DNA of 63,671 nucleotides, counting the filler, from Octopus bimaculoides (taxonomy: Eukaryota): NCBI RefSeq assembly GCF_001194135.2. It is 5 parts of 4 records of this genome, joined end to end, with 100 filler letters (N's around TTAATTAATTAA, not from the genome) between each part and the next. Parts side by side here need not be neighbours in the genome. Positions count along the whole stretch, not along the records: positions 56,870 to 61,019 come from NW_026295624.1; positions 61,120 to 63,671 come from NC_068984.1; 3 more parts are not named here. One strand, given 5' to 3'. This document shows positions 11,815 to 61,387 of this stretch, in pieces. Each line of letters begins with the position of its first letter. Positions within the stretch are counted from its first letter, which is position 1. The notes beneath the pieces were generated by a model. That model made no database searches. It worked only from the letters and a program-made list of their open reading frames with translations, and was not told where the DNA came from. The position numbers and the translations under genes were made by a program.

Positions 11815-12589
11815 NNNNNNNNNNNNNNNNNNNNNNNNNNNNNNNNNNNNNNNNNNNNNNNNNNNNNNNNNNNNNNNNNNNNNNNNNNNNNNNNNNNNNN
11901 NNNNNNNNNNNNNNNNNNNNNNNNNNNNNNNNNNNNNNNNNNNNNNNNNNNNNNNNNNNNNNNNNNNNNNNNNNNNNNNNNNNNNNNNNNNNNNNNNNNN
12001 NNNNNNNNNNNNNNNNNNNNNNNNNNNNNNNNNNNNNNNNNNNNNNNNNNNNNNNNNNNNNNNNNNNNNNNNNNNNNNNNNNNNNNNNNNNNNNNNNNNN
12101 NNNNNNNNNNNNNNNNNNNNNNNNNNNNNNNNNNNNNNNNNNNNNNNNNNNNNNNNNNNNNNNNNNNNNNNNNNNNNNNNNNNNNNNNNNNNNNNNNNNN
12201 NNNNNNNNNNNNNNNNNNNNNNNNNNNNNNNNNNNNNNNNNNNNNNNNNNNNNNNNNNNNNNNNNNNNNNNNNNNNNNNNNNNNNNNNNNNNNNNNNNNN
12301 NNNNNNNNNNNNNNNNNNNNNNNNNNNNNNNNNNNNNNNNNNNNNNNNNNNNNNNNNNNNNNNNNNNNNNNNNNNNNNNNNNNNNNNNNNNNNNNNNNNN
12401 NNNNNNNNNNNNNNNNNNNNNNNNNNNGGGAAAAACTTTGAAGCCACTGTCAACAATACTCTTGCTTAAGAGTAATAAGATTGTACTCACATGTATACAT
12501 ATATATCTCTGTAGATATATATACATATACATACAAACATACATACGTACATAAATATAGACTCTCATATATACATTCTTATTTTTCTT

Positions 12590-12970
12590 TTATTATTTTG
12601 TTTCAGTCATTTGACTGCGGTCATACTGGAGCAGCACGTTTAGTCGACCAAATCGACCCCAGGTATTATTCTTTGTAAACCTAGTACTTATTCTATCGGT
12701 TCCTTTTGCCGTACCGCTGACTTATGGGGACGTAAACACACCAACGTCGGTTGTCAAGCGATGGTGTCGGGACAAATACATACACACAAACACATACACA
12801 CTTACATACACACACACACAGGGCTTCTTTCAGATTCCGTCTACCAAATCCACTCACAAGGCTTTGGTCGACCCGAGTCTATAGAAGACACTTGCCCAAG
12901 ATGCCACGCAGTGGGACTGAAACCGGAACCATGTGGTTGGTAAGCAAGCTACCTACTACACGGCCATATA
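12590..12970 (-). mobile_element. SINE family A
   Basis: Near full-length match to 864-1231. Confidence 0.85.
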
Positions 12971-20440: not shown

Positions 20441-21405
20441 GAGTAGAAAACTTTGTTGTTAGAGTAAAGCAAACATTTGAATGCCTGGAAGAATTGCTAA
20501 AGTTGAGTAAAATCAAGGAAAATAATGAAGTGTTACAGTAAAAGAAATCACAGATCCGAGTTTCAAGAGCATCAGCAGCCAAATGAAGATAAGAAATTAA
20601 ATATCTTTGGGCCCAGTTTCACAAATAGATGAGTAAATGTTTTGTCCCCTTGCAGTACCCATTTGTAGTATCACACCTTCATCATGTGATGAGAAAGAAA
20701 TAATAATTACAGATAAATATTCACAAGCAGTTGATGAAAATACAGAAGGCAAATGGAGAAAAAAAAGTTGTCAAAATAGAAGGTTCAACATAAAACAAAG
20801 AAAACAGGTGAGGAACAATTTCTTTGAAATAACATTGAACCATCTTCAGGAAAATAACAAAGAAAATGAATAGGACAAAGATGAACTAAGATTCATCAGT
20901 TTTCGCAAAATCAAAAGAATTTATGGAAGCAACTCCACAACTCTGGTGCCATGGAGTCTCTGAAGAAGTTAGAATTATACACAAAGAATTAAGCTTAGAA
21001 TATAAGTAATATGCAAAGAATAAGTTTCTAGTAAGCCTAAAATTAAGACATTATACCAAATTTTAAAAGAGAATACCACCAAGATATTGGTGTTTTTCAA
21101 CACCAAATACCTCAAAAAATGCTTACTGGTACATTTAGTTGCACTTGCATAAAATTTAAGAAAGTGTTTAAGAAATAAAACATGAAAGATTTTTGCTAGA
21201 TTGAATCAAAACATTTTGTGGGGTGGACCCTGACTCAACCTTCTTACTTTAAGTCATATCTAGTTTTAAGTATTGTGTGTTTTATTGAATTTTTATGTAT
21301 TTTCATGCAAATATGCATGCATGTATGAACACATTTGTGTGTGCATGTATGTAATGTGCATGTGTGTATGTATATATGTATGGTTATGCATGAGTCTGAG
21401 TGTGT

Positions 21406-21670: not shown

Positions 21671-22209
21671 TATATGTATACATGTGTGTATGTTTGTATA
21701 TGTATGCATATATGTGCATGTATGTGTGTGCATGTGAGTGTGTGTATTTTTAAAATCTTTGTTACATCCTTCCATACATTGTATAACATTTCTCACTTTT
21801 CTCTTTGAAATTTGTATAAACTTTTTTCGCACTCCAAATTCATATTTTTTTTGTATCTCATTGAGCTCTTGTAGAAGAACTTATGGTTAATTACTACTAC
21901 TATTATTAAAGTCGGCCATGTTTGAGTTGTCATAACAGAACCAAAAGCTGATTTACTTGATTTATTTCATCTTTTAGCAATTCTATGTGCTTATATCACT
22001 GAATAATCACTCTTGTAGATTTAATTATCCTTTTCATTATCATCATGATTGTGATTGTCATAGACATTTTCATCATCATCATCATCATCATCATCATTTA
22101 TATCAGATTTAGTGATTCTCTCTTCATTAAATTGGCTAGACCAGTGAAGACTCTGCTTTGCTGATGAGGTTAGTATAATATCGAAATATGTCTCAAGTTG
22201 TCTCCTGTA

Positions 22210-56869: not shown

Positions 56870-57470
56870 GGCAAACAAATAGCCAACTCTTTTTCAATAA
56901 TGTCTTTGTTGAAGAGGGTTAAGGCATTGCGTGACCTACAATAGGTCCGCATGACCACTGTCCTCTTCTCCATTTCTTTCAACCACTGCTTGGGTGGGCA
57001 CAGTTCCCACTCCAAGACAGTGTTGTTCTTTTTTGCCATGCCTTCAAAAGTTTAAAAAAAAAACAAAGAAAAGTTCGAACCAAAAAGTTCACAATAAAAA
57101 TAAATAAATAAATAAAAAGGAACAGAAAGACAGAGCAGAGAAAAAGAAGGAAGGAAGACAGTTTGATGCACAGCAACACAATTCCGGGCACTCGGTAATC
57201 CTAGCAGGTATTCCAGTAAAGGCAATCCACAGCAACAGGAACAGAGAAATCCTTAGAATTTTTTCGTCAAGTCTTTCGGAGGCGAGATACGCCCACAAAA
57301 AGCGACGGTTCTCTCCATTATGTGAGACACAAAAAGTTTTTTCACAAAAAATTCTCAGTCCGCTCTCATGGTGAGTCGAACACACCCACCAATAACAGTG
57401 AACGAGAACACAATTTGCTCACTATAAAATGAACAACAAATACAGCCGCCGTGGCAGAAGAAATTGCCCA
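56870..57470 (-). mobile_element. Probable 5' end (UTR plus ORF1 start) of a non-LTR retrotransposon
   Basis: ORF MAKKNNTVLEWELCPPKQWLKEMEKRTVVMRTYCRSRNALTLFNKDIIEKELAICL runs into the gap and follows a CpG-containing, pyrimidine-rich leader. The ORF1 assignment is inferred. Confidence 0.4.
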
Positions 57471-58333
57471 GAGCTAGGCTAAATTTACTGAAACAAATTA
57501 AACACAATAAATTATACCCAGCTCAAAAAACCAATTCCACCTACCTCGGTCGACTTCACAATTTTCAATTTCTGGACGGCACTCACACACGTCCACAATG
57601 TTCAATAGCAAGAAGGACTAACTCTCCAATACCGGAAGCAAGCTTCTTACCATACGGCCACACCTGTGCCTTTCTAGAACTTATTTTACAAACCAAGAAG
57701 AAAAGAAATGTAAAATTCTGGTGGGTTAGAACTCTGAGTAACATACAAAGACAGAACTAAATACTGGACCATTCCCCATCTATTTAGATAAGTAGTTTTA
57801 GACCAGGGTTCATATAAGAATTGGTTGACAAAGTTCATGTGCAATAAACTGGTTATTCTTCTACAATACATAAAATATTTTAACAGGCATAGATGTGACA
57901 ATGAAACATTACCACTTCTGAGGTGTAATANNNNNNNNNNNNNNNNNNNNNNNNNNNNNNNNNNNNNNNNNNNNNNNNNNNNNNNNNNNNNNNNNNNNNN
58001 NNNNNNNNNNNNNNNNNNNNNNNNNNNNNNNNNNNNNNNNNNNNNNNNNNNNNNNNNNNNNNNNNNNNNNNNNNNNNNNNNNNNNNNNNNNNNNNNNNNN
58101 NNNNNNNNNNNNNNNNNNNNNNNNNNNNNNNNGAACCTTGGTCATCTTCGAAAGTGACAGGTGAACAACATTCTGCAGTCATTGCTGTATTAGCTACTTT
58201 GGTCCACACCCCCACAAAAGAGCAAAGCATATTTATTAAAGTTTTTTTTTTAAATGCGGAGGAAAAAGCAAACTTTTCTGCAACTAAATTATACTGGAGC
58301 ATAGGTGACTGATGGGAGAGTGAGAGGCGGGGT

Positions 58334-58705
58334 CTAATTAATTAACAATAACTGTTTTCCAGTCATACAGGAAAGGGTTATTCAGCACCTAACATTGGAC
58401 CTTGTTGACATAATTTGAGATTGGCATTTTCACCATTGACCAGCTATAGACTAAAAGCATTACCTTTTTAACCATGTAATCCTATTGGGTTTCACATCAT
58501 GGTGCAGATACAGAAGACTGTTGCATCCTTTGTTTTTAAAGATGACGGACGACTACTTGGGCTATTATTTTCTTCGACACACTTGGGTTGACCAATGTCT
58601 TGTAATAATAATTTAATGGGCAGAAACCGCATGGAAACTTGAAAGTTTGCAAAAAAAATGGTGATGTGTCAGTGTGTATGTGTGCATGCACACAAATTTG
58701 TTTAC
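58334..58705. repeat. Left arm of >=372-bp inverted repeat (partner 60649-61019)
   Basis: Reverse-complement match with about a dozen differences. The right arm ends at a gap. Confidence 0.92.
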
Positions 58706-58831
58706 ATTACAGCACCAAACATTGTTGGTGTTCTTTAGATCAATGGTTCCAGTCTTCCAACTGACATTGCCAGTCTTTTGAGTATAATACTTAATGGAAC
58801 CAGACCATTCAAGTGTATCTGGAAGCTTCAT
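58613..58831 (-). pseudogene. Inverted, truncated copy of the USP37-like exon fused to the inverted repeat
   Basis: 58706-58848 is the reverse complement of 59073-59215 (2 mismatches). Encodes MKLPDTLEWSGSIKYYTQKTGNVSWKTGTIDLKNTNNVWCCN, then 30 unrelated residues. Confidence 0.65.
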
Positions 58832-59089
58832 ACTGATGGTGCTAGGTGAATGAGCTGCAATTCTCGGTTTTCCTTTCCTCGACTGCGAGTCCGTCTTGCG
58901 GTATCCGATCCTTGAAGCTTGCCCCGACCCAAGGTACACCAGGTATAGCAGCTGCNNNNNNNNNNTTTCCTTTCCTCGACTGCGAGTCCGTCTTGCGGTA
59001 TCCGATCCTTGAAGCTTGCCCCGACCCAAGGTACACCAGGTATAGCAGCTGCTTCTCCCAAACCTAGACCGTCACCTAGCACCATCAGT

Positions 59090-59236
59090 ATGAAGCTTCC
59101 AGATACACTTGAATGGTCTGGTTCCATTAAGTATTATACTCAAAAGACTGGCAATATCAGTTGGAAGACTGGAACCCTTGATCTAAAGAACACCAACAAT
59201 GTTTGGTGCTGTAATGTGACGTTGAGTACCAATAAG
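59090..59236 (+). CDS. USP37: Putative first coding exon of a USP37-like deubiquitinase (N-terminal PH-like domain)
   Basis: LEWSGSIKYYTQKTGNISWKTGTLDLKNTNNVWCCNV aligns without gaps to the human USP37 N-terminus as I recall it (LKIHGPIRIRSMQTGITKWKEGSFEIVEKENKVSLVV). G-x-I, TG-x3-WK-x-G and the hydrophobic spacing are conserved. Possible phase-0 donor AAG|GTTTAC. Not database-verified. Confidence 0.55.
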
Positions 59237-59439
59237 GTTTACCCAGCTATAACATTTAAGTCGATTCGTTCAAACATCAATTTTTAAGAAACGGCTTCTT
59301 CTGGAATTTGCTGGTGGGCTAGGTGAATGAGCTGCAATTCTCGGTTTTCCTTTCCTCGACTGCGAGTCCGTCTTGCGGTATCCGATCCTTGAAGCTTGCC
59401 CCGACCCAAGGTATAGCAGCTGCTTCTCCCAAACCTAGA

Positions 59440-59580
59440 CCGTCGCTTAACACGTCTTATCCTGACCGCAGCCCCGTTCGAAAAGGTCACGAACGCCGAT
59501 CGAGGCTCCCTCTGCCCTGTTTCCCCTTCCGGTCGACTCGCGCTTCCGGTCAGCCTCCCCAGACACTGACGTCATACCAT
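59440..59580. promoter_or_regulatory. CpG-rich promoter-like island with two ETS motifs and a CRE
   Basis: ~16 CpG in ~135 bp. CCGGAAG on the minus strand at 59526-59532 and 59543-59549. TGACGTCA at 59567-59574. Confidence 0.6.
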
Positions 59581-61387
59581 ATAGATAACAAGGATTAGGA
59601 CTTTCAGAGATGTAAGAAAGGCACATTCAAAACTACGTGCAGTTTTAAAACATATAAAGAATTAAATGTTTCAAGTAAAATATAATTTCATACAGTATAA
59701 TTTCCTTAAACTTTTATAAACTTCCAACTGTTTTGCAGTTTTCAAAATAATCGTGGAACTTCCATGGGTATTGCTAGTTTGCATAACTATTTATCATCGC
59801 TGAACATCACTAATTTCCTTTGATTCTACAGTTTTCCGGTGAAAATTATTAGGAATTACACGATAAGTCATAACATTCAATAATCTCAGGCGATAGTTGC
59901 ATTGAAAACTATAGTCTATGCACAAGCTTGGATAATAATTGTGTACGTATTTTTCTTTAGGAACTTATTTGGTATATCACCGATTTAAAATCGGTCATTA
60001 TTGCTATTTATGTTGTGTTGTCTTTAAATGCTCATGGCAGAAATATTTAGTAGAATGAAGACTGCGTAAATACACAAGGAAGGTAAGGCTGTATTGATAA
60101 TCTTGAACATGTTTGTGAAAGAAAGAAAAATATGTTAAAAAATCTAGTTAGCTAGTCTGTCTTGTAAAATGTTTACTAAGCACGTGTTTTAAACTTGTGT
60201 TACATTCATAGCAATAATGTCTATTATTTGTTTCCAAGCATATATCCTTGTAGATAAATAAGAAAACATACAACGAGATATTTCGAATCAATGAAGTAGC
60301 CTCTACATGCTAGATATAACAGCCACATTTTCTCAAAATATCCTATCGTGGTGAAAAGGAACCACATGTAGCATACAGGCGCAATAGTGTCCCCCACCAC
60401 CTTTGTTTTTTTTATAACTTTCAGGATATTTTTTTTATGAAATTTTCTCCAAAAACGTATCAGATGCTGTAGATTCCAATTGTATCGGAATTTGTTGTGG
60501 AAAATTTCCGGAGAGGAGTTAGGTAAATCCTCAGGAGTCTGTTTTTGTTTTCTCATGACTTTCAGAAAAATGCGTATTCTTTTAATGAAATTTTCTGCGA
60601 ATATCTTTCAGATTGTGTAGATTATATCAGAATTTACTAACGAAAAAAGTAAACAAATTTGTGTGCATGCCCGCATACACACTGACACATCACCATTTAT
60701 TTGCAAAATTTCAAGTTTCCATGCGGTTTCTGCCCATCAAATTATTATTACAAGACATTGGTCAACCCAAGTGTGTCGAAGAAAATAATAGCCCAAGTAG
60801 TCGTCCGTCATCTTTAAAAACAAAGGATTCAACAGTCTTCTGTATCTGCACCATGATGTGAAACCCAATAGAACTACATGGTTAAAAAGGTAATGCCTTT
60901 AGTCTATAGCTGGTCAATGGTGAAAATGCCAATCTCAAATTATGTCAAAAAGGTCCAATGTTAGGTGGGGAATAACCCTTTCCTGTATGACTGGAAAACA
61001 GTTATTGTTAATTAATTAGNNNNNNNNNNNNNNNNNNNNNNNNNNNNNNNNNNNNNNNNNNNNTTAATTAATTAANNNNNNNNNNNNNNNNNNNNNNNNN
61101 NNNNNNNNNNNNNNNNNNNTATATATATATATATATATAGTCACTACGAGGATATATTGTCCTCGTAAAGGGACACTGGTTTAATATCTTATATTGTTGA
61201 GAAATATTTCTTCAATATAAAGAGGTATATTATAAATATCAAAATATCAAATATTATTTAGTAAGAAATGAAGAGTTTAAATGCATATAAATTAATTTAT
61301 TAACCTTTCTTAATAATATTTTTAATACAGCCTACAATTCTTTCAATTTACACTCAATACAAATTACAAACCTATAGAATAAACTAA

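What the first reader, a model, noticed from the sequence alone, without database searches (positions are those of the whole stretch)
58334..61019. Host-gene 5' end (USP37-like exon, leader, promoter) scrambled between long inverted repeats
Seen in sequence: the order is A(58334-58705), rc(B)(58706-58848), C(58840-59072 once the overlap across the 10-N gap is collapsed), B+U(59073-59317), C'(59318-59443), CpG island, unique DNA, rc(A)(60649-61019, cut by a gap). B carries the USP37-like exon. If the ancestral order was rc(U)-rc(B)-C-promoter, the new junctions show only short microhomology (AC at A/rc(B), TC at C/B, TGGTG near U/C'). C and C' differ by a 9-bp indel, and the two A arms are ~3-4% diverged. 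Inference: three options are a Pack-MULE-like long-TIR element that captured a promoter plus first exon, a template-switch (FoSTeS/MMBIR) inverted duplication, or staggered-break inversion ends. I am not aware of Pack-type capture being well documented in cephalopods. A minus-strand transcript from the island would contain rc(B)...B, a ~140-bp dsRNA stem, which is notable given extensive ADAR editing in coleoids.
Basis: partly seen in the sequence, partly recalled or inferred. Interest (0 to 1): 0.85.

Follow-up and report, generated by a model that had tools for sequence, protein, structure and literature searches.

The report
Scrambled intronless USP37-like gene fragment
What looked like a gene's promoter and first exon shuffled between inverted repeats is three overlapping, alternately flipped pieces of the spliced, intron-free message of an octopus USP37-like gene. 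It is a scrambled retro-copied pseudogene fragment on a gap-ridden scaffold, and its main interest is that it would fold into a long RNA hairpin if transcribed.

Summary
The repeat pattern is real. Arms A are 375 nt long and 96% identical. The B copies match at 144 of 146 nt. C and C' differ only by a 9-nt indel. The 10-N gap is an unmerged overlap, because the 87 nt on its two sides are identical.

The material is not a gene's 5' end in place. In Octopus vulgaris, O. bimaculoides and a more distant relative, the homologous coding exon (E2) has an acceptor 31 nt (octopuses) or 14 nt (distant relative) before the ATG and is followed by a 2-4.5 kb intron. In the window, 'B+U' runs from E2 straight into the next exon with no intron, and it carries an 8-nt frameshifting deletion. 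Both C and C' join an unrelated GC-rich leader to E2 exactly at that acceptor. Copy 1 is cut in mid-exon.

On the + strand the block 58704-59583 reads antisense, then sense, then antisense, and each segment holds an exon-exon junction. The segments are joined by 2-3 nt of microhomology.

My best reading is a processed (cDNA-derived) USP37-like fragment scrambled by template switching, either during reverse transcription or during later replication. Pack-MULE capture is not supported. Reads could not be consulted, so an assembly artefact remains possible (about 0.2).

The parts
58334..58708 (.). Left arm A of the outer inverted repeat. Its inner end abuts the cDNA-derived block at junction J1, which has AC microhomology at 58704-58705.
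   Evidence: 375 nt, 96.3% identical to the reverse complement of 60646-61019; 58556-58683 is about 60% similar to a SINE-like repeat present at least 3 times in L002.
58704..58849 (-). B copy 1: coding exon E2, positions +14 to +159. The ATG is at 58831-58829 and the copy covers codons 1-43. It is cut in mid-exon where arm A begins.
   Evidence: 96.3% identical to O. vulgaris E2 and 93.2% to O. bimaculoides E2. In both relatives the exon continues for 43 more nt.
58841..59073 (-). C: the leader, which is sense on the minus strand. It consists of the first 22 nt of E2 (58841-58862) joined at 58862|58863 to 114 nt of an unrelated GC-rich upstream exon. It contains the 10-N gap (58956-58965), and 58966-59052 is a redundant repeat of 58869-58955.
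   Evidence: for the 87-nt exact overlap; homology to the relatives stops exactly at the acceptor tttgtttcag|AATTGCA. for coordinates.
59072..59320 (+). B copy 2 plus U: an intronless sense fragment. It holds E2 from +14 to its end (59260) and then the first 60 nt of the next exon E3 (59261-59320). An 8-nt deletion lies between 59279 and 59280, causing a frameshift and a stop at 59285-59287.
   Evidence: The relatives have introns of 1952 nt (L001 10172-12123), 4543 nt (L002 22499-27041) and about 2.9 kb (L003) at AAG|gt...ag|TTG. The ORF 59090-59287 equals the annotated 65-aa protein P0009.
59318..59444 (-). C': a second, direct copy of the leader. It has 22 nt of E2 and 105 nt of the upstream exon, with the exon-exon junction at 59339|59340. 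It lacks the 9-nt ACACCAGGT. Junction J3 with U has GCT microhomology.
59445..59583 (-). GC- and CpG-rich block continuous with C'. It is either the 5' part of the leader exon or promoter DNA. It holds a perfect CRE, TGACGTCA, at 59567-59574 and two CTTCCGG sites (ETS-type on the gene strand) at 59526-59532 and 59543-59549.
   Evidence: No counterpart was found within 22 kb upstream of E2 in O. vulgaris or 10 kb in O. bimaculoides.
59584..60645 (.). Spacer q: AT-rich and single-copy within the piece. Its first ~210 nt are about 65% similar to the region just upstream of E2 in the relatives.
60646..61019 (.). Right arm, rc(A). It is cut by the end of the piece.

Best explanation
The block 58704-59583 is made of reverse-transcribed (spliced) sequence from the 5' end of a USP37-like mRNA. 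It is not the gene's own exon, intron and promoter.

With the gap collapsed, the + strand reads as follows:
- arm A;
- antisense E2+159 back to leader -114;
- sense E2+14 through the E2/E3 junction to E3+68;
- antisense E2+22 back through the leader into the GC block;
- spacer q;
- rc(A).

Each of the three segments contains an exon-exon junction. The joints carry 2-3 nt of microhomology, and the third has a 10-of-11 imperfect match.

Shown: the fragment lacks introns, is truncated, carries a frameshift, and has the zigzag order with the joints described.

Inferred: a processed copy or cDNA was scrambled by microhomology-primed template switching. I see two ways this could have happened.
1. 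During retro-insertion. The inner unit C-[B2+U]-C' has the form of an antisense, internally primed, 5'-truncated cDNA insert flanked by a 127/136-bp target duplication. In this version two DNA 3' ends each prime on the mRNA, as in twin priming.
2. Later, by a replicative (FoSTeS/MMBIR, fold-back type) event acting on a pre-existing processed pseudogene.

The A arms are more diverged than B and C, so they probably predate that event. The locus cannot encode the protein. If it is transcribed from the GC block, it yields a 146-bp hairpin.
For: - Intron positions. E2 is followed by an intron at AAG|gt in O. bimaculoides (1952 nt), O. vulgaris (4543 nt) and a distant relative (~2.9 kb). The window goes AAG|TCGATTCG straight into E3.
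- Acceptor. Homology of C and C' to both octopuses ends to the nucleotide at the acceptor ...tttgtttcag|AATTGCA. The annotated O. vulgaris model P0008 splices to that same acceptor from a different exon.
- Disablement. There is an 8-nt deletion with a stop in copy 2, and copy 1 is cut at codon 43.
- No other USP37-like exon is present in the piece.
- Junction microhomologies are AC, TC and GCT.
- Divergence. A has 13 substitutions in 375 nt and B+C have 2 in 272 nt (Fisher p = 0.03).
- Reverse transcriptase source. LINE elements are active in octopus (PMC9115989).
- Precedent. Fold-back junctions carrying reverse-transcribed mRNA inserts are documented for L1 (PMC11702581).
Against: - There is no poly(A) tract and no short TSD.
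- The leader exon was not found in the relatives within 10-22 kb upstream of E2. That it is 'spliced on' therefore rests on the exact coincidence with the acceptor.
- The GC block carries a CRE and two ETS-type motifs. These fit non-transcribed promoter DNA better than a cDNA.
- The piece consists of three tiny contigs with gaps, and exact repeats of 84-96 nt had to be crossed by the assembler.
Confidence: 0.55

Rival explanations
1. Assembly artefact. The short scaffold strings together contigs and gap-closing walks from two or more loci or haplotypes, for example a simple retro-copy plus another copy, through exact 84-96-nt repeats. Alternatively it contains chimeric library molecules. On this reading the scrambled order does not exist as one molecule.
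For: - The piece is 4.15 kb, made of contigs of 1061, 823 and 2054 nt separated by 202-N and 10-N gaps and ending in a gap.
- The 10-N gap is an unmerged 87-nt overlap.
- Exact shared runs of 96 nt (C/C'), 84 nt (B) and 90 nt (A) exceed usual k-mer sizes.
- An alternative path through the same joints exists: A-rc(B1)-C'-GC block, plus a separate C-B2-U unit.
Against: - The three non-colinear joints lie inside contigs and share only 2-3 nt, so a k-mer graph cannot invent them. Reads containing them must exist.
- Both sides of the gap carry the +9 variant of C, while C' lacks it. This supports the given adjacency.
- The copies differ (2 of 146 in B, 14 of 375 in A), which is not expected of one locus assembled twice.
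Confidence: 0.2
2. The event took place at the gene's native promoter. On this reading the GC block and leader exon are the real promoter and first exon. A break just downstream was then repaired using the gene's own spliced transcript or cDNA as template, with template switches. That would fuse exon 1 to 22 nt of E2 and insert the zigzag.
For: - The CRE and two ETS-type sites lie 82-130 nt upstream of the point where C ends, an arrangement typical of a core promoter. CpG o/e there is 1.36.
- C ends at a possible cap site.
- Using the gene's own transcript would explain why the inserted RNA and the target belong to the same gene.
- The first intron could be longer than 22 kb, which would explain why the leader is absent from L001 and L002.
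Against: - It would disrupt a probably essential gene, unless the allele is heterozygous or the block is spliced around.
- There is no evidence here that this is the only copy of the promoter.
- It needs more steps than the best explanation.
- Retro-copies made from upstream start sites can also carry promoter-proximal motifs.
Confidence: 0.15
3. A purely DNA-level rearrangement of the gene's genuine genomic 5' end. This is the reader's premise, either as FoSTeS/MMBIR acting on exon, intron and promoter, or as staggered-break inversion ends.
For: There is microhomology at every joint, and the segments are nearby with alternating orientation.
Against: - Two introns conserved in three relatives are absent from all three segments.
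- Staggered-break inversion predicts only inverted duplications at the ends, not the direct C/C' repeat.
Confidence: 0.04
4. A Pack-MULE-like long-TIR DNA transposon that captured a promoter and first exon.
For: Inverted arms of at least 375 bp flank gene-derived cargo.
Against: - The cargo is intronless and internally scrambled.
- The arms are 3.7% diverged.
- No transposase-related ORF or Pfam domain is present in the piece.
- Part of arm A resembles a SINE-like repeat rather than a TIR.
- The outer ends and TSDs cannot be seen, because the right arm is cut by the end of the piece.
Confidence: 0.03

Closest known systems
Processed pseudogenes and L1 insertions with inversions (twin priming; Ostertag & Kazazian 2001, cited from my own knowledge)
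   Same: The sequence is spliced and derived from an mRNA. Adjacent segments of the same RNA lie in opposite orientation and are joined at a few nt of microhomology. Two DNA 3' ends priming on the RNA would reproduce joints J2 and J3.
   Different: There is no poly(A)-bearing 3' segment and no short TSD. There are three segments rather than two, and they overlap by about 150 nt. Only the 5' ~0.5 kb of the mRNA is present. The flanking duplication is 127/136 bp.
Fold-back junctions carrying reverse-transcribed inserts, induced by L1 ORF2p (PMC11702581)
   Same: Genomic arms in inverted orientation (A and rc(A)) with an asymmetric single-copy spacer (q, 1062 nt) and processed-mRNA sequence at the junction. 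Microhomology-mediated joining.
   Different: Those cases are somatic events in human cell clones, with full-length cDNA and poly(A) primed at endonuclease sites. Here the extent of the arms is unknown, the arms look older than the insert, and the insert is a zigzag.
Complex replicative rearrangements (FoSTeS/MMBIR, DUP-TRP/INV-DUP; Carvalho et al. 2011, cited from my own knowledge)
   Same: A forward-inverted-forward order of overlapping segments taken from within about 1.5 kb, with 2-3 nt of microhomology at each joint.
   Different: The scale is hundreds of bp rather than kb-Mb. The template is an intronless copy. Copy-number evidence is not available.
Pseudogene-derived inverted-repeat (hairpin RNA / endo-siRNA) loci, e.g. 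psiPPM1K (PMC3616710), mouse oocyte and Drosophila hpRNA loci
   Same: A partial retro-copy containing an inverted duplication of parental exon sequence that can fold into a long perfect-stem hairpin (146 bp here).
   Different: Transcription and small RNAs are untested here. Nothing comparable turned up for cephalopods.
Pack-MULEs (Jiang et al. 2004, cited from my own knowledge)
   Same: Long inverted arms around gene fragments.
   Different: Pack-MULEs capture genomic DNA with introns, have 9-11-bp TSDs and have family-specific TIR ends in many copies. Here the first feature is contradicted and the others cannot be seen.

Membership tests
Processed pseudogene / retro-copy | Lacks introns at positions where the parent gene has them | tested here: met
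   The E2|E3 junction at 59260|59261 and the leader|E2 junctions at 58862|58863 and 59339|59340 are intronless. Introns are present at both positions in L001, L002 and L003.
Processed pseudogene / retro-copy | 3' poly(A) tract | tested here: not met
   The fragments end inside E2 or E3. No A-run adjoins them. The nearest run is 10 T at 58242-58251, outside arm A.
Processed pseudogene / retro-copy | Short (5-20 bp) target-site duplications | tested here: not met
   No short direct repeat flanks the block. The only flanking direct repeat is C/C' (136/127 nt), around the inner antisense fragment.
Processed pseudogene / retro-copy | Intron-containing parent gene elsewhere in the same genome | not testable with these tools
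   The organism is not identified. P0009 is not on record with a position.
Processed pseudogene / retro-copy | Disabling lesions | tested here: met
   An 8-nt deletion gives a frameshift and a stop at 59285. Copy 1 is truncated at codon 43.
Pack-MULE-like TIR element | Captured fragment copies genomic DNA (introns retained) | tested here: not met
   All gene-derived segments are spliced.
Pack-MULE-like TIR element | Terminal inverted repeats with defined outer ends flanked by 8-11-bp TSD | not testable with these tools
   The right arm is cut by the end of the piece at 61019, exactly where the alignment starts.
Pack-MULE-like TIR element | Arms belong to a multi-copy family with an autonomous, transposase-encoding partner | tested here: inconclusive
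   No transposase domain was found in the ORFs of the piece. No copy of A occurs in 80 kb of related loci. A genome-wide count is not possible.
FoSTeS/MMBIR-type complex rearrangement | At least two breakpoint joints with short microhomology, joining nearby segments in alternating orientation | tested here: met
   AC, TC and GCT at J1-J3, and an antisense/sense/antisense order.
FoSTeS/MMBIR-type complex rearrangement | Copy-number gain of the duplicated segments confirmed in reads | not testable with these tools
Hairpin-RNA (hpRNA / endo-siRNA) locus | Long inverted repeat that folds into a near-perfect dsRNA stem | tested here: met
   A 146-bp stem with 2 mismatches. The MFE is -430 kcal/mol for the 887-nt minus-strand RNA.
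Hairpin-RNA (hpRNA / endo-siRNA) locus | Transcription through both arms, and small RNAs or editing from the stem | not testable with these tools
   No RNA data are available.
USP37 (N-terminal UCH_N / PH-like domain plus UCH) | N-terminal PH-like domain of USP37 type | tested here: inconclusive
   There is no direct Pfam hit. The intermediate homologue P0006 carries PF16674 UCH_N over the matching residues. The top PDB fold hit of a low-confidence model (pLDDT 44) is 3U12, the USP37 PH domain (E 0.01).
USP37 (N-terminal UCH_N / PH-like domain plus UCH) | UCH catalytic domain in the same gene | tested here: met
   This holds in the orthologues. The next gene model carries PF00443, and the last exons of P0002 map inside the O. 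vulgaris UCH model. The window itself holds only the 5' fragment.

The most novel reading that the evidence does not exclude
The locus could be a functional hairpin-RNA gene born from a retro-copy. Transcription from the retained CRE/ETS-bearing GC block would give an RNA with a 146-bp perfect-stem hairpin against the first coding exon of the USP37-like parent gene. That would make it a substrate for ADAR editing or RNAi that modulates the parent. A related reading is that the locus records repair of a break at the gene's own promoter using its own spliced transcript as template.
Probability: 0.12. Interest if true: 0.65.

Novelty: new member of a known kind. Interest (0 to 1): 0.35.

Why it matters
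This result changes what the finding is. It is not a promoter and first exon moved about by a DNA transposon or an inversion. It is RNA-derived sequence scrambled by template switching. It would be a concrete cephalopod example of a retro-copy with a sense/antisense architecture, consistent with the reverse-transcriptase activity reported for octopus LINEs. If it is expressed, it would be a natural long dsRNA aimed at a deubiquitinase gene in animals known for heavy ADAR editing.

In practice, the 65-aa protein annotated here (P0009) is a pseudogene ORF. The locus also warns that short gap-ridden scaffolds can hold structures that need long-read confirmation.

Tried and rejected
- The word-index protein search with the 40-aa exon found nothing, although close homologues exist. 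The exhaustive search found them.
- A chimeric query made of other ORFs of the piece found nothing.
- Exact look-ups of ten ORFs found nothing.
- P0007 and P0009 have no recorded position.
- Two metagenome scans, with an arm-A 22-mer and a leader 26-mer, found nothing.
- Pfam gave no direct hit for the exon or for other ORFs. Rfam gave only one chance-level sub-threshold match, and no tRNA was found.
- Searches for the leader/GC block, for arm A and for most of q in L001, L002 and L003 were negative.
- No further USP37-like exons are present in the piece.
- Classical twin priming was rejected as a full explanation, because there is no poly(A) segment and there are three overlapping segments.
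- Snap-back of a single nascent cDNA was rejected, because the sense segment extends beyond the start of the antisense one and is itself spliced.
- A simple TE insertion of A into an intron was rejected, because rc(U) does not resume on the far side of A.
- O. bimaculoides as the source was rejected. The window shares none of about 12 O. bimaculoides-specific substitutions and is closer to O. vulgaris, without being identical to it.
Full report
**Observation.** The piece (56870-61019) consists of three contigs of 1061, 823 and 2054 nt, separated by a 202-N gap and a 10-N gap.
- A is 58334-58708 against the reverse complement of 60646-61019. It is 375/374 nt with 13 substitutions and one indel.
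- B is 58704-58849 on the minus strand against 59072-59217 on the plus strand, 144 of 146 nt identical.
- C and C' differ only by the 9-nt ACACCAGGT.
- The longest exact repeats are 96 nt (direct) and 90 nt (inverted). In 100 shuffles they reach at most 14 and 18 nt.

**The gap.** The 87 nt before the 10-N gap (58869-58955) are identical to the 87 nt after it (58966-59052). The contig ends therefore overlap. Collapsed, C is 136 nt (58841-58955 plus 59053-59073) and colinear with C' (59318-59444). ORFs that cross the gap mean nothing. The right arm of A ends exactly at the edge of the piece, so its outer end and any TSD cannot be seen.

**What the exon is.** The word-index search with the exon failed. 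An exhaustive HMMER search found these homologues:
- O. bimaculoides LOC106871317 (P0002, 93% identical over 41 aa);
- a more distant 88-aa homologue (P0004);
- a starfish protein (P0006).

P0002 then led to the O. vulgaris proteins P0007 and P0008.

P0006 carries Pfam UCH_N, the 'N-terminal of USP37' domain, over the matching residues. In both octopus genomes the small N-terminal gene model is followed by a model with a UCH domain. The last exons of P0002 map inside the O. vulgaris UCH model, so the two models are one gene. A low-confidence AlphaFold model of P0002 (pLDDT 44) has the USP37 PH domain 3U12 as its best PDB fold match. 'USP37-like' is therefore reasonably supported. The window is 96.3% identical to O. 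vulgaris and about 93% to O. bimaculoides in this exon, and it shares no O. bimaculoides-specific change. The source is an unidentified octopod nearer to O. vulgaris.

**The key result: the gene-derived segments are spliced.** I call the ATG-containing exon E2.
- In O. bimaculoides E2 is L001 9970-10171. It is preceded by the acceptor ttttttgtttcag| and followed by a 1952-nt intron (AAG|gtaagt ... tttctag|TTGATTCGG).
- In O. vulgaris E2 is L002 22297-22498, with the same acceptor and a 4543-nt intron. The annotated model P0008 splices an upstream exon onto that acceptor.
- A distant relative (L003) has introns at both positions.

In the window, copy 2 runs AAG|TCGATTCG (59260|59261) from E2 directly into 60 nt of E3. 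It then has an 8-nt deletion (59279|59280) that shifts the frame to a stop at 59285.

In both C and C', similarity to the relatives stops to the nucleotide at the E2 acceptor (58862|58863 and 59339|59340). It is replaced by a GC-rich sequence ending ...CCGAG. That is what an upstream non-coding exon spliced onto E2 looks like. Copy 1 of B is cut at codon 43, in mid-exon, where arm A starts. No other exon of the gene is in the piece. Neither copy is an intact gene start.

**Anatomy.** On the + strand, with the gap collapsed, the order is:
1. arm A;
2. joint J1 (AC);
3. antisense E2+159 back to leader -114;
4. joint J2 (TC);
5. sense E2+14 through to E3+68;
6. joint J3 (GCT, within CTGGTGG-GCT against CTGATGGTGCT);
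7. antisense E2+22 through the leader into the GC block, up to 59583;
8. spacer q (1062 nt);
9. rc(A).

Each of the three segments contains an exon-exon junction. The inner unit C-[B2+U]-C' has the form of an antisense cDNA insert flanked by a 136/127-bp direct duplication of its target.

**Mechanism.** The following are shown: intronless, truncated and frameshifted gene fragments in alternating orientation, joined at 2-3 nt of microhomology. The mechanism itself is inferred: template switching on cDNA or on a processed copy. I see two versions and cannot separate them here.

(a) A reverse-transcription-coupled event. One 3' end (...CACCTAGC at E2+22) primes on the mRNA at E3+68. The other (...GACCGTC at leader -114, or the end of arm A at E2+159) primes as well. 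The two cDNAs then join at TC. This resembles twin priming and produces the long target duplication. Octopus LINEs are reported to be active (PMC9115989). L1-induced fold-back junctions with processed-mRNA inserts are documented (PMC11702581).

(b) A later replicative (FoSTeS/MMBIR, fold-back type) event on an ordinary processed pseudogene.

The A arms are more diverged (13/375) than B plus C (2/272; Fisher p = 0.03). They are therefore probably older than the B/C duplication.

**Open point: promoter or copied leader.** The GC block (59445-59583, CpG o/e 1.36) holds a perfect CRE and two ETS-type sites 82-130 nt upstream of the point where C ends. That looks like a real core promoter and fits an event at the gene's native promoter, repaired from its own spliced transcript. 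It also fits a retro-copy made from an upstream start site. The leader and GC block have no counterpart within 22 kb (O. vulgaris) or 10 kb (O. bimaculoides) upstream of E2, so this could not be settled.

**Rivals.**
- Assembly artefact (about 0.2). The contigs are tiny, one overlap is unmerged, and exact repeats of 84-96 nt exist. Against it, the joints lie inside contigs, share only 2-3 nt, and the copies differ.
- DNA-level rearrangement of the genuine genomic 5' end, and staggered-break inversion. Both are contradicted by the missing introns, and the second also by the direct C/C' repeat.
- Pack-MULE-like capture. It is not supported. The cargo is spliced and no transposase remnant is present. 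Part of A resembles a SINE-like repeat. TSDs and outer ends cannot be seen.

**Hairpin.** A minus-strand transcript would fold into a 146-bp stem with two mismatches. The loop is about 125 nt once the gap is collapsed, and the MFE is -430 kcal/mol for 887 nt. This follows directly from the inverted repeat. Expression, editing and small RNAs are untested. Known analogues are pseudogene-derived hairpin loci such as psiPPM1K (PMC3616710).

**Verdict.** The substrate is cDNA-derived, not a host-gene 5' end, and Pack-type capture is not supported. This is a new member of a known kind, of moderate interest, and it needs read-level confirmation.

Noticed in passing
window 59585-59794 (+); L002 21626-21709 and 22119-22276; L001 9793-9947: The first ~210 nt of the 'unique' spacer align colinearly, in gene-sense orientation, with the intron sequence just upstream of E2 in both octopuses. 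Identity is only about 65%, against 87% between the two octopuses there and 96% for the window's E2. The Smith-Waterman score is 37, against at most 25 in shuffles; 1 of 38 real-sequence control windows scored higher. It could be an old shared repeat or an ancient paralogue lying beside the young cDNA block. This is unexplained.
   Followed up: partly
window 58556-58683 (minus strand); L002 15137-15266, 18106-18229, ~21128-21270: The inner part of arm A is about 60% similar to the 5' region of a SINE-like repeat that occurs at least three times in the O. vulgaris locus. Arm A is therefore at least partly old repeat-derived sequence.
   Followed up: partly
window 59090-59287 (+): The ORF of the frameshifted copy 2 is exactly the 65-aa protein P0009, held in UniRef and clustered with the O. 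vulgaris proteins. The source genome's annotation thus calls a pseudogene fragment a protein.
   Followed up: yes
L001 10001-13445 and 14569-23445+; L002 10001-27374 and 28910-37374+: Both public octopus annotations split the USP37-like gene into an N-terminal 'uncharacterized/hypothetical' model and a separate UCH model. The last exons of P0002 map inside the O. vulgaris UCH model.
   Followed up: partly
L002 ~21710-22152: O. vulgaris carries a TTAA-flanked MITE (ends CCCTTTAGTG... and ...CTAAAAAG) with a SINE embedded in it, about 150 nt upstream of E2. O. bimaculoides has the empty TTAA site. A second copy of the MITE ends lies at L002 ~12300-12750.
   Followed up: partly
window 58334-58345 and 61008-61019: The visible outer end of arm A is CTAATTAATTAA, and its reverse complement forms the last 12 nt of the piece. 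This nearly equals the scan's artificial stop-codon linker TTAATTAATTAA. It is genuine sequence, because it also occurs inside the piece. The start of the arm alignment is set only by the end of the piece.
   Followed up: yes
window 60427-60475 and 60575-60623; L001 1394-1444: There is an imperfect ~148-nt tandem duplication (80%) in the spacer just inside the right arm. One unit is 86% identical over 52 nt to a site 8.5 kb upstream of the O. bimaculoides exon. It is probably an interspersed repeat.
   Followed up: no
window 56870-57039 (-): An ATG-initiated ORF (MAKKNNTVLEWELCPP...) runs off the left edge of the piece. It has no Pfam hit and no homologue.
   Followed up: partly
window 57630-57680: A short fragment similar (82-86%) to a repeat found at four or more places in the O. 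vulgaris locus, the common octopus SINE. An (AAAT)n microsatellite lies at 57098-57116.
   Followed up: no
window 58242-58251: There is a run of 10 T (A on the minus strand) 82 nt outside the visible end of arm A. If A belongs to a poly(A)-tailed retroelement, this could be its tail.
   Followed up: no
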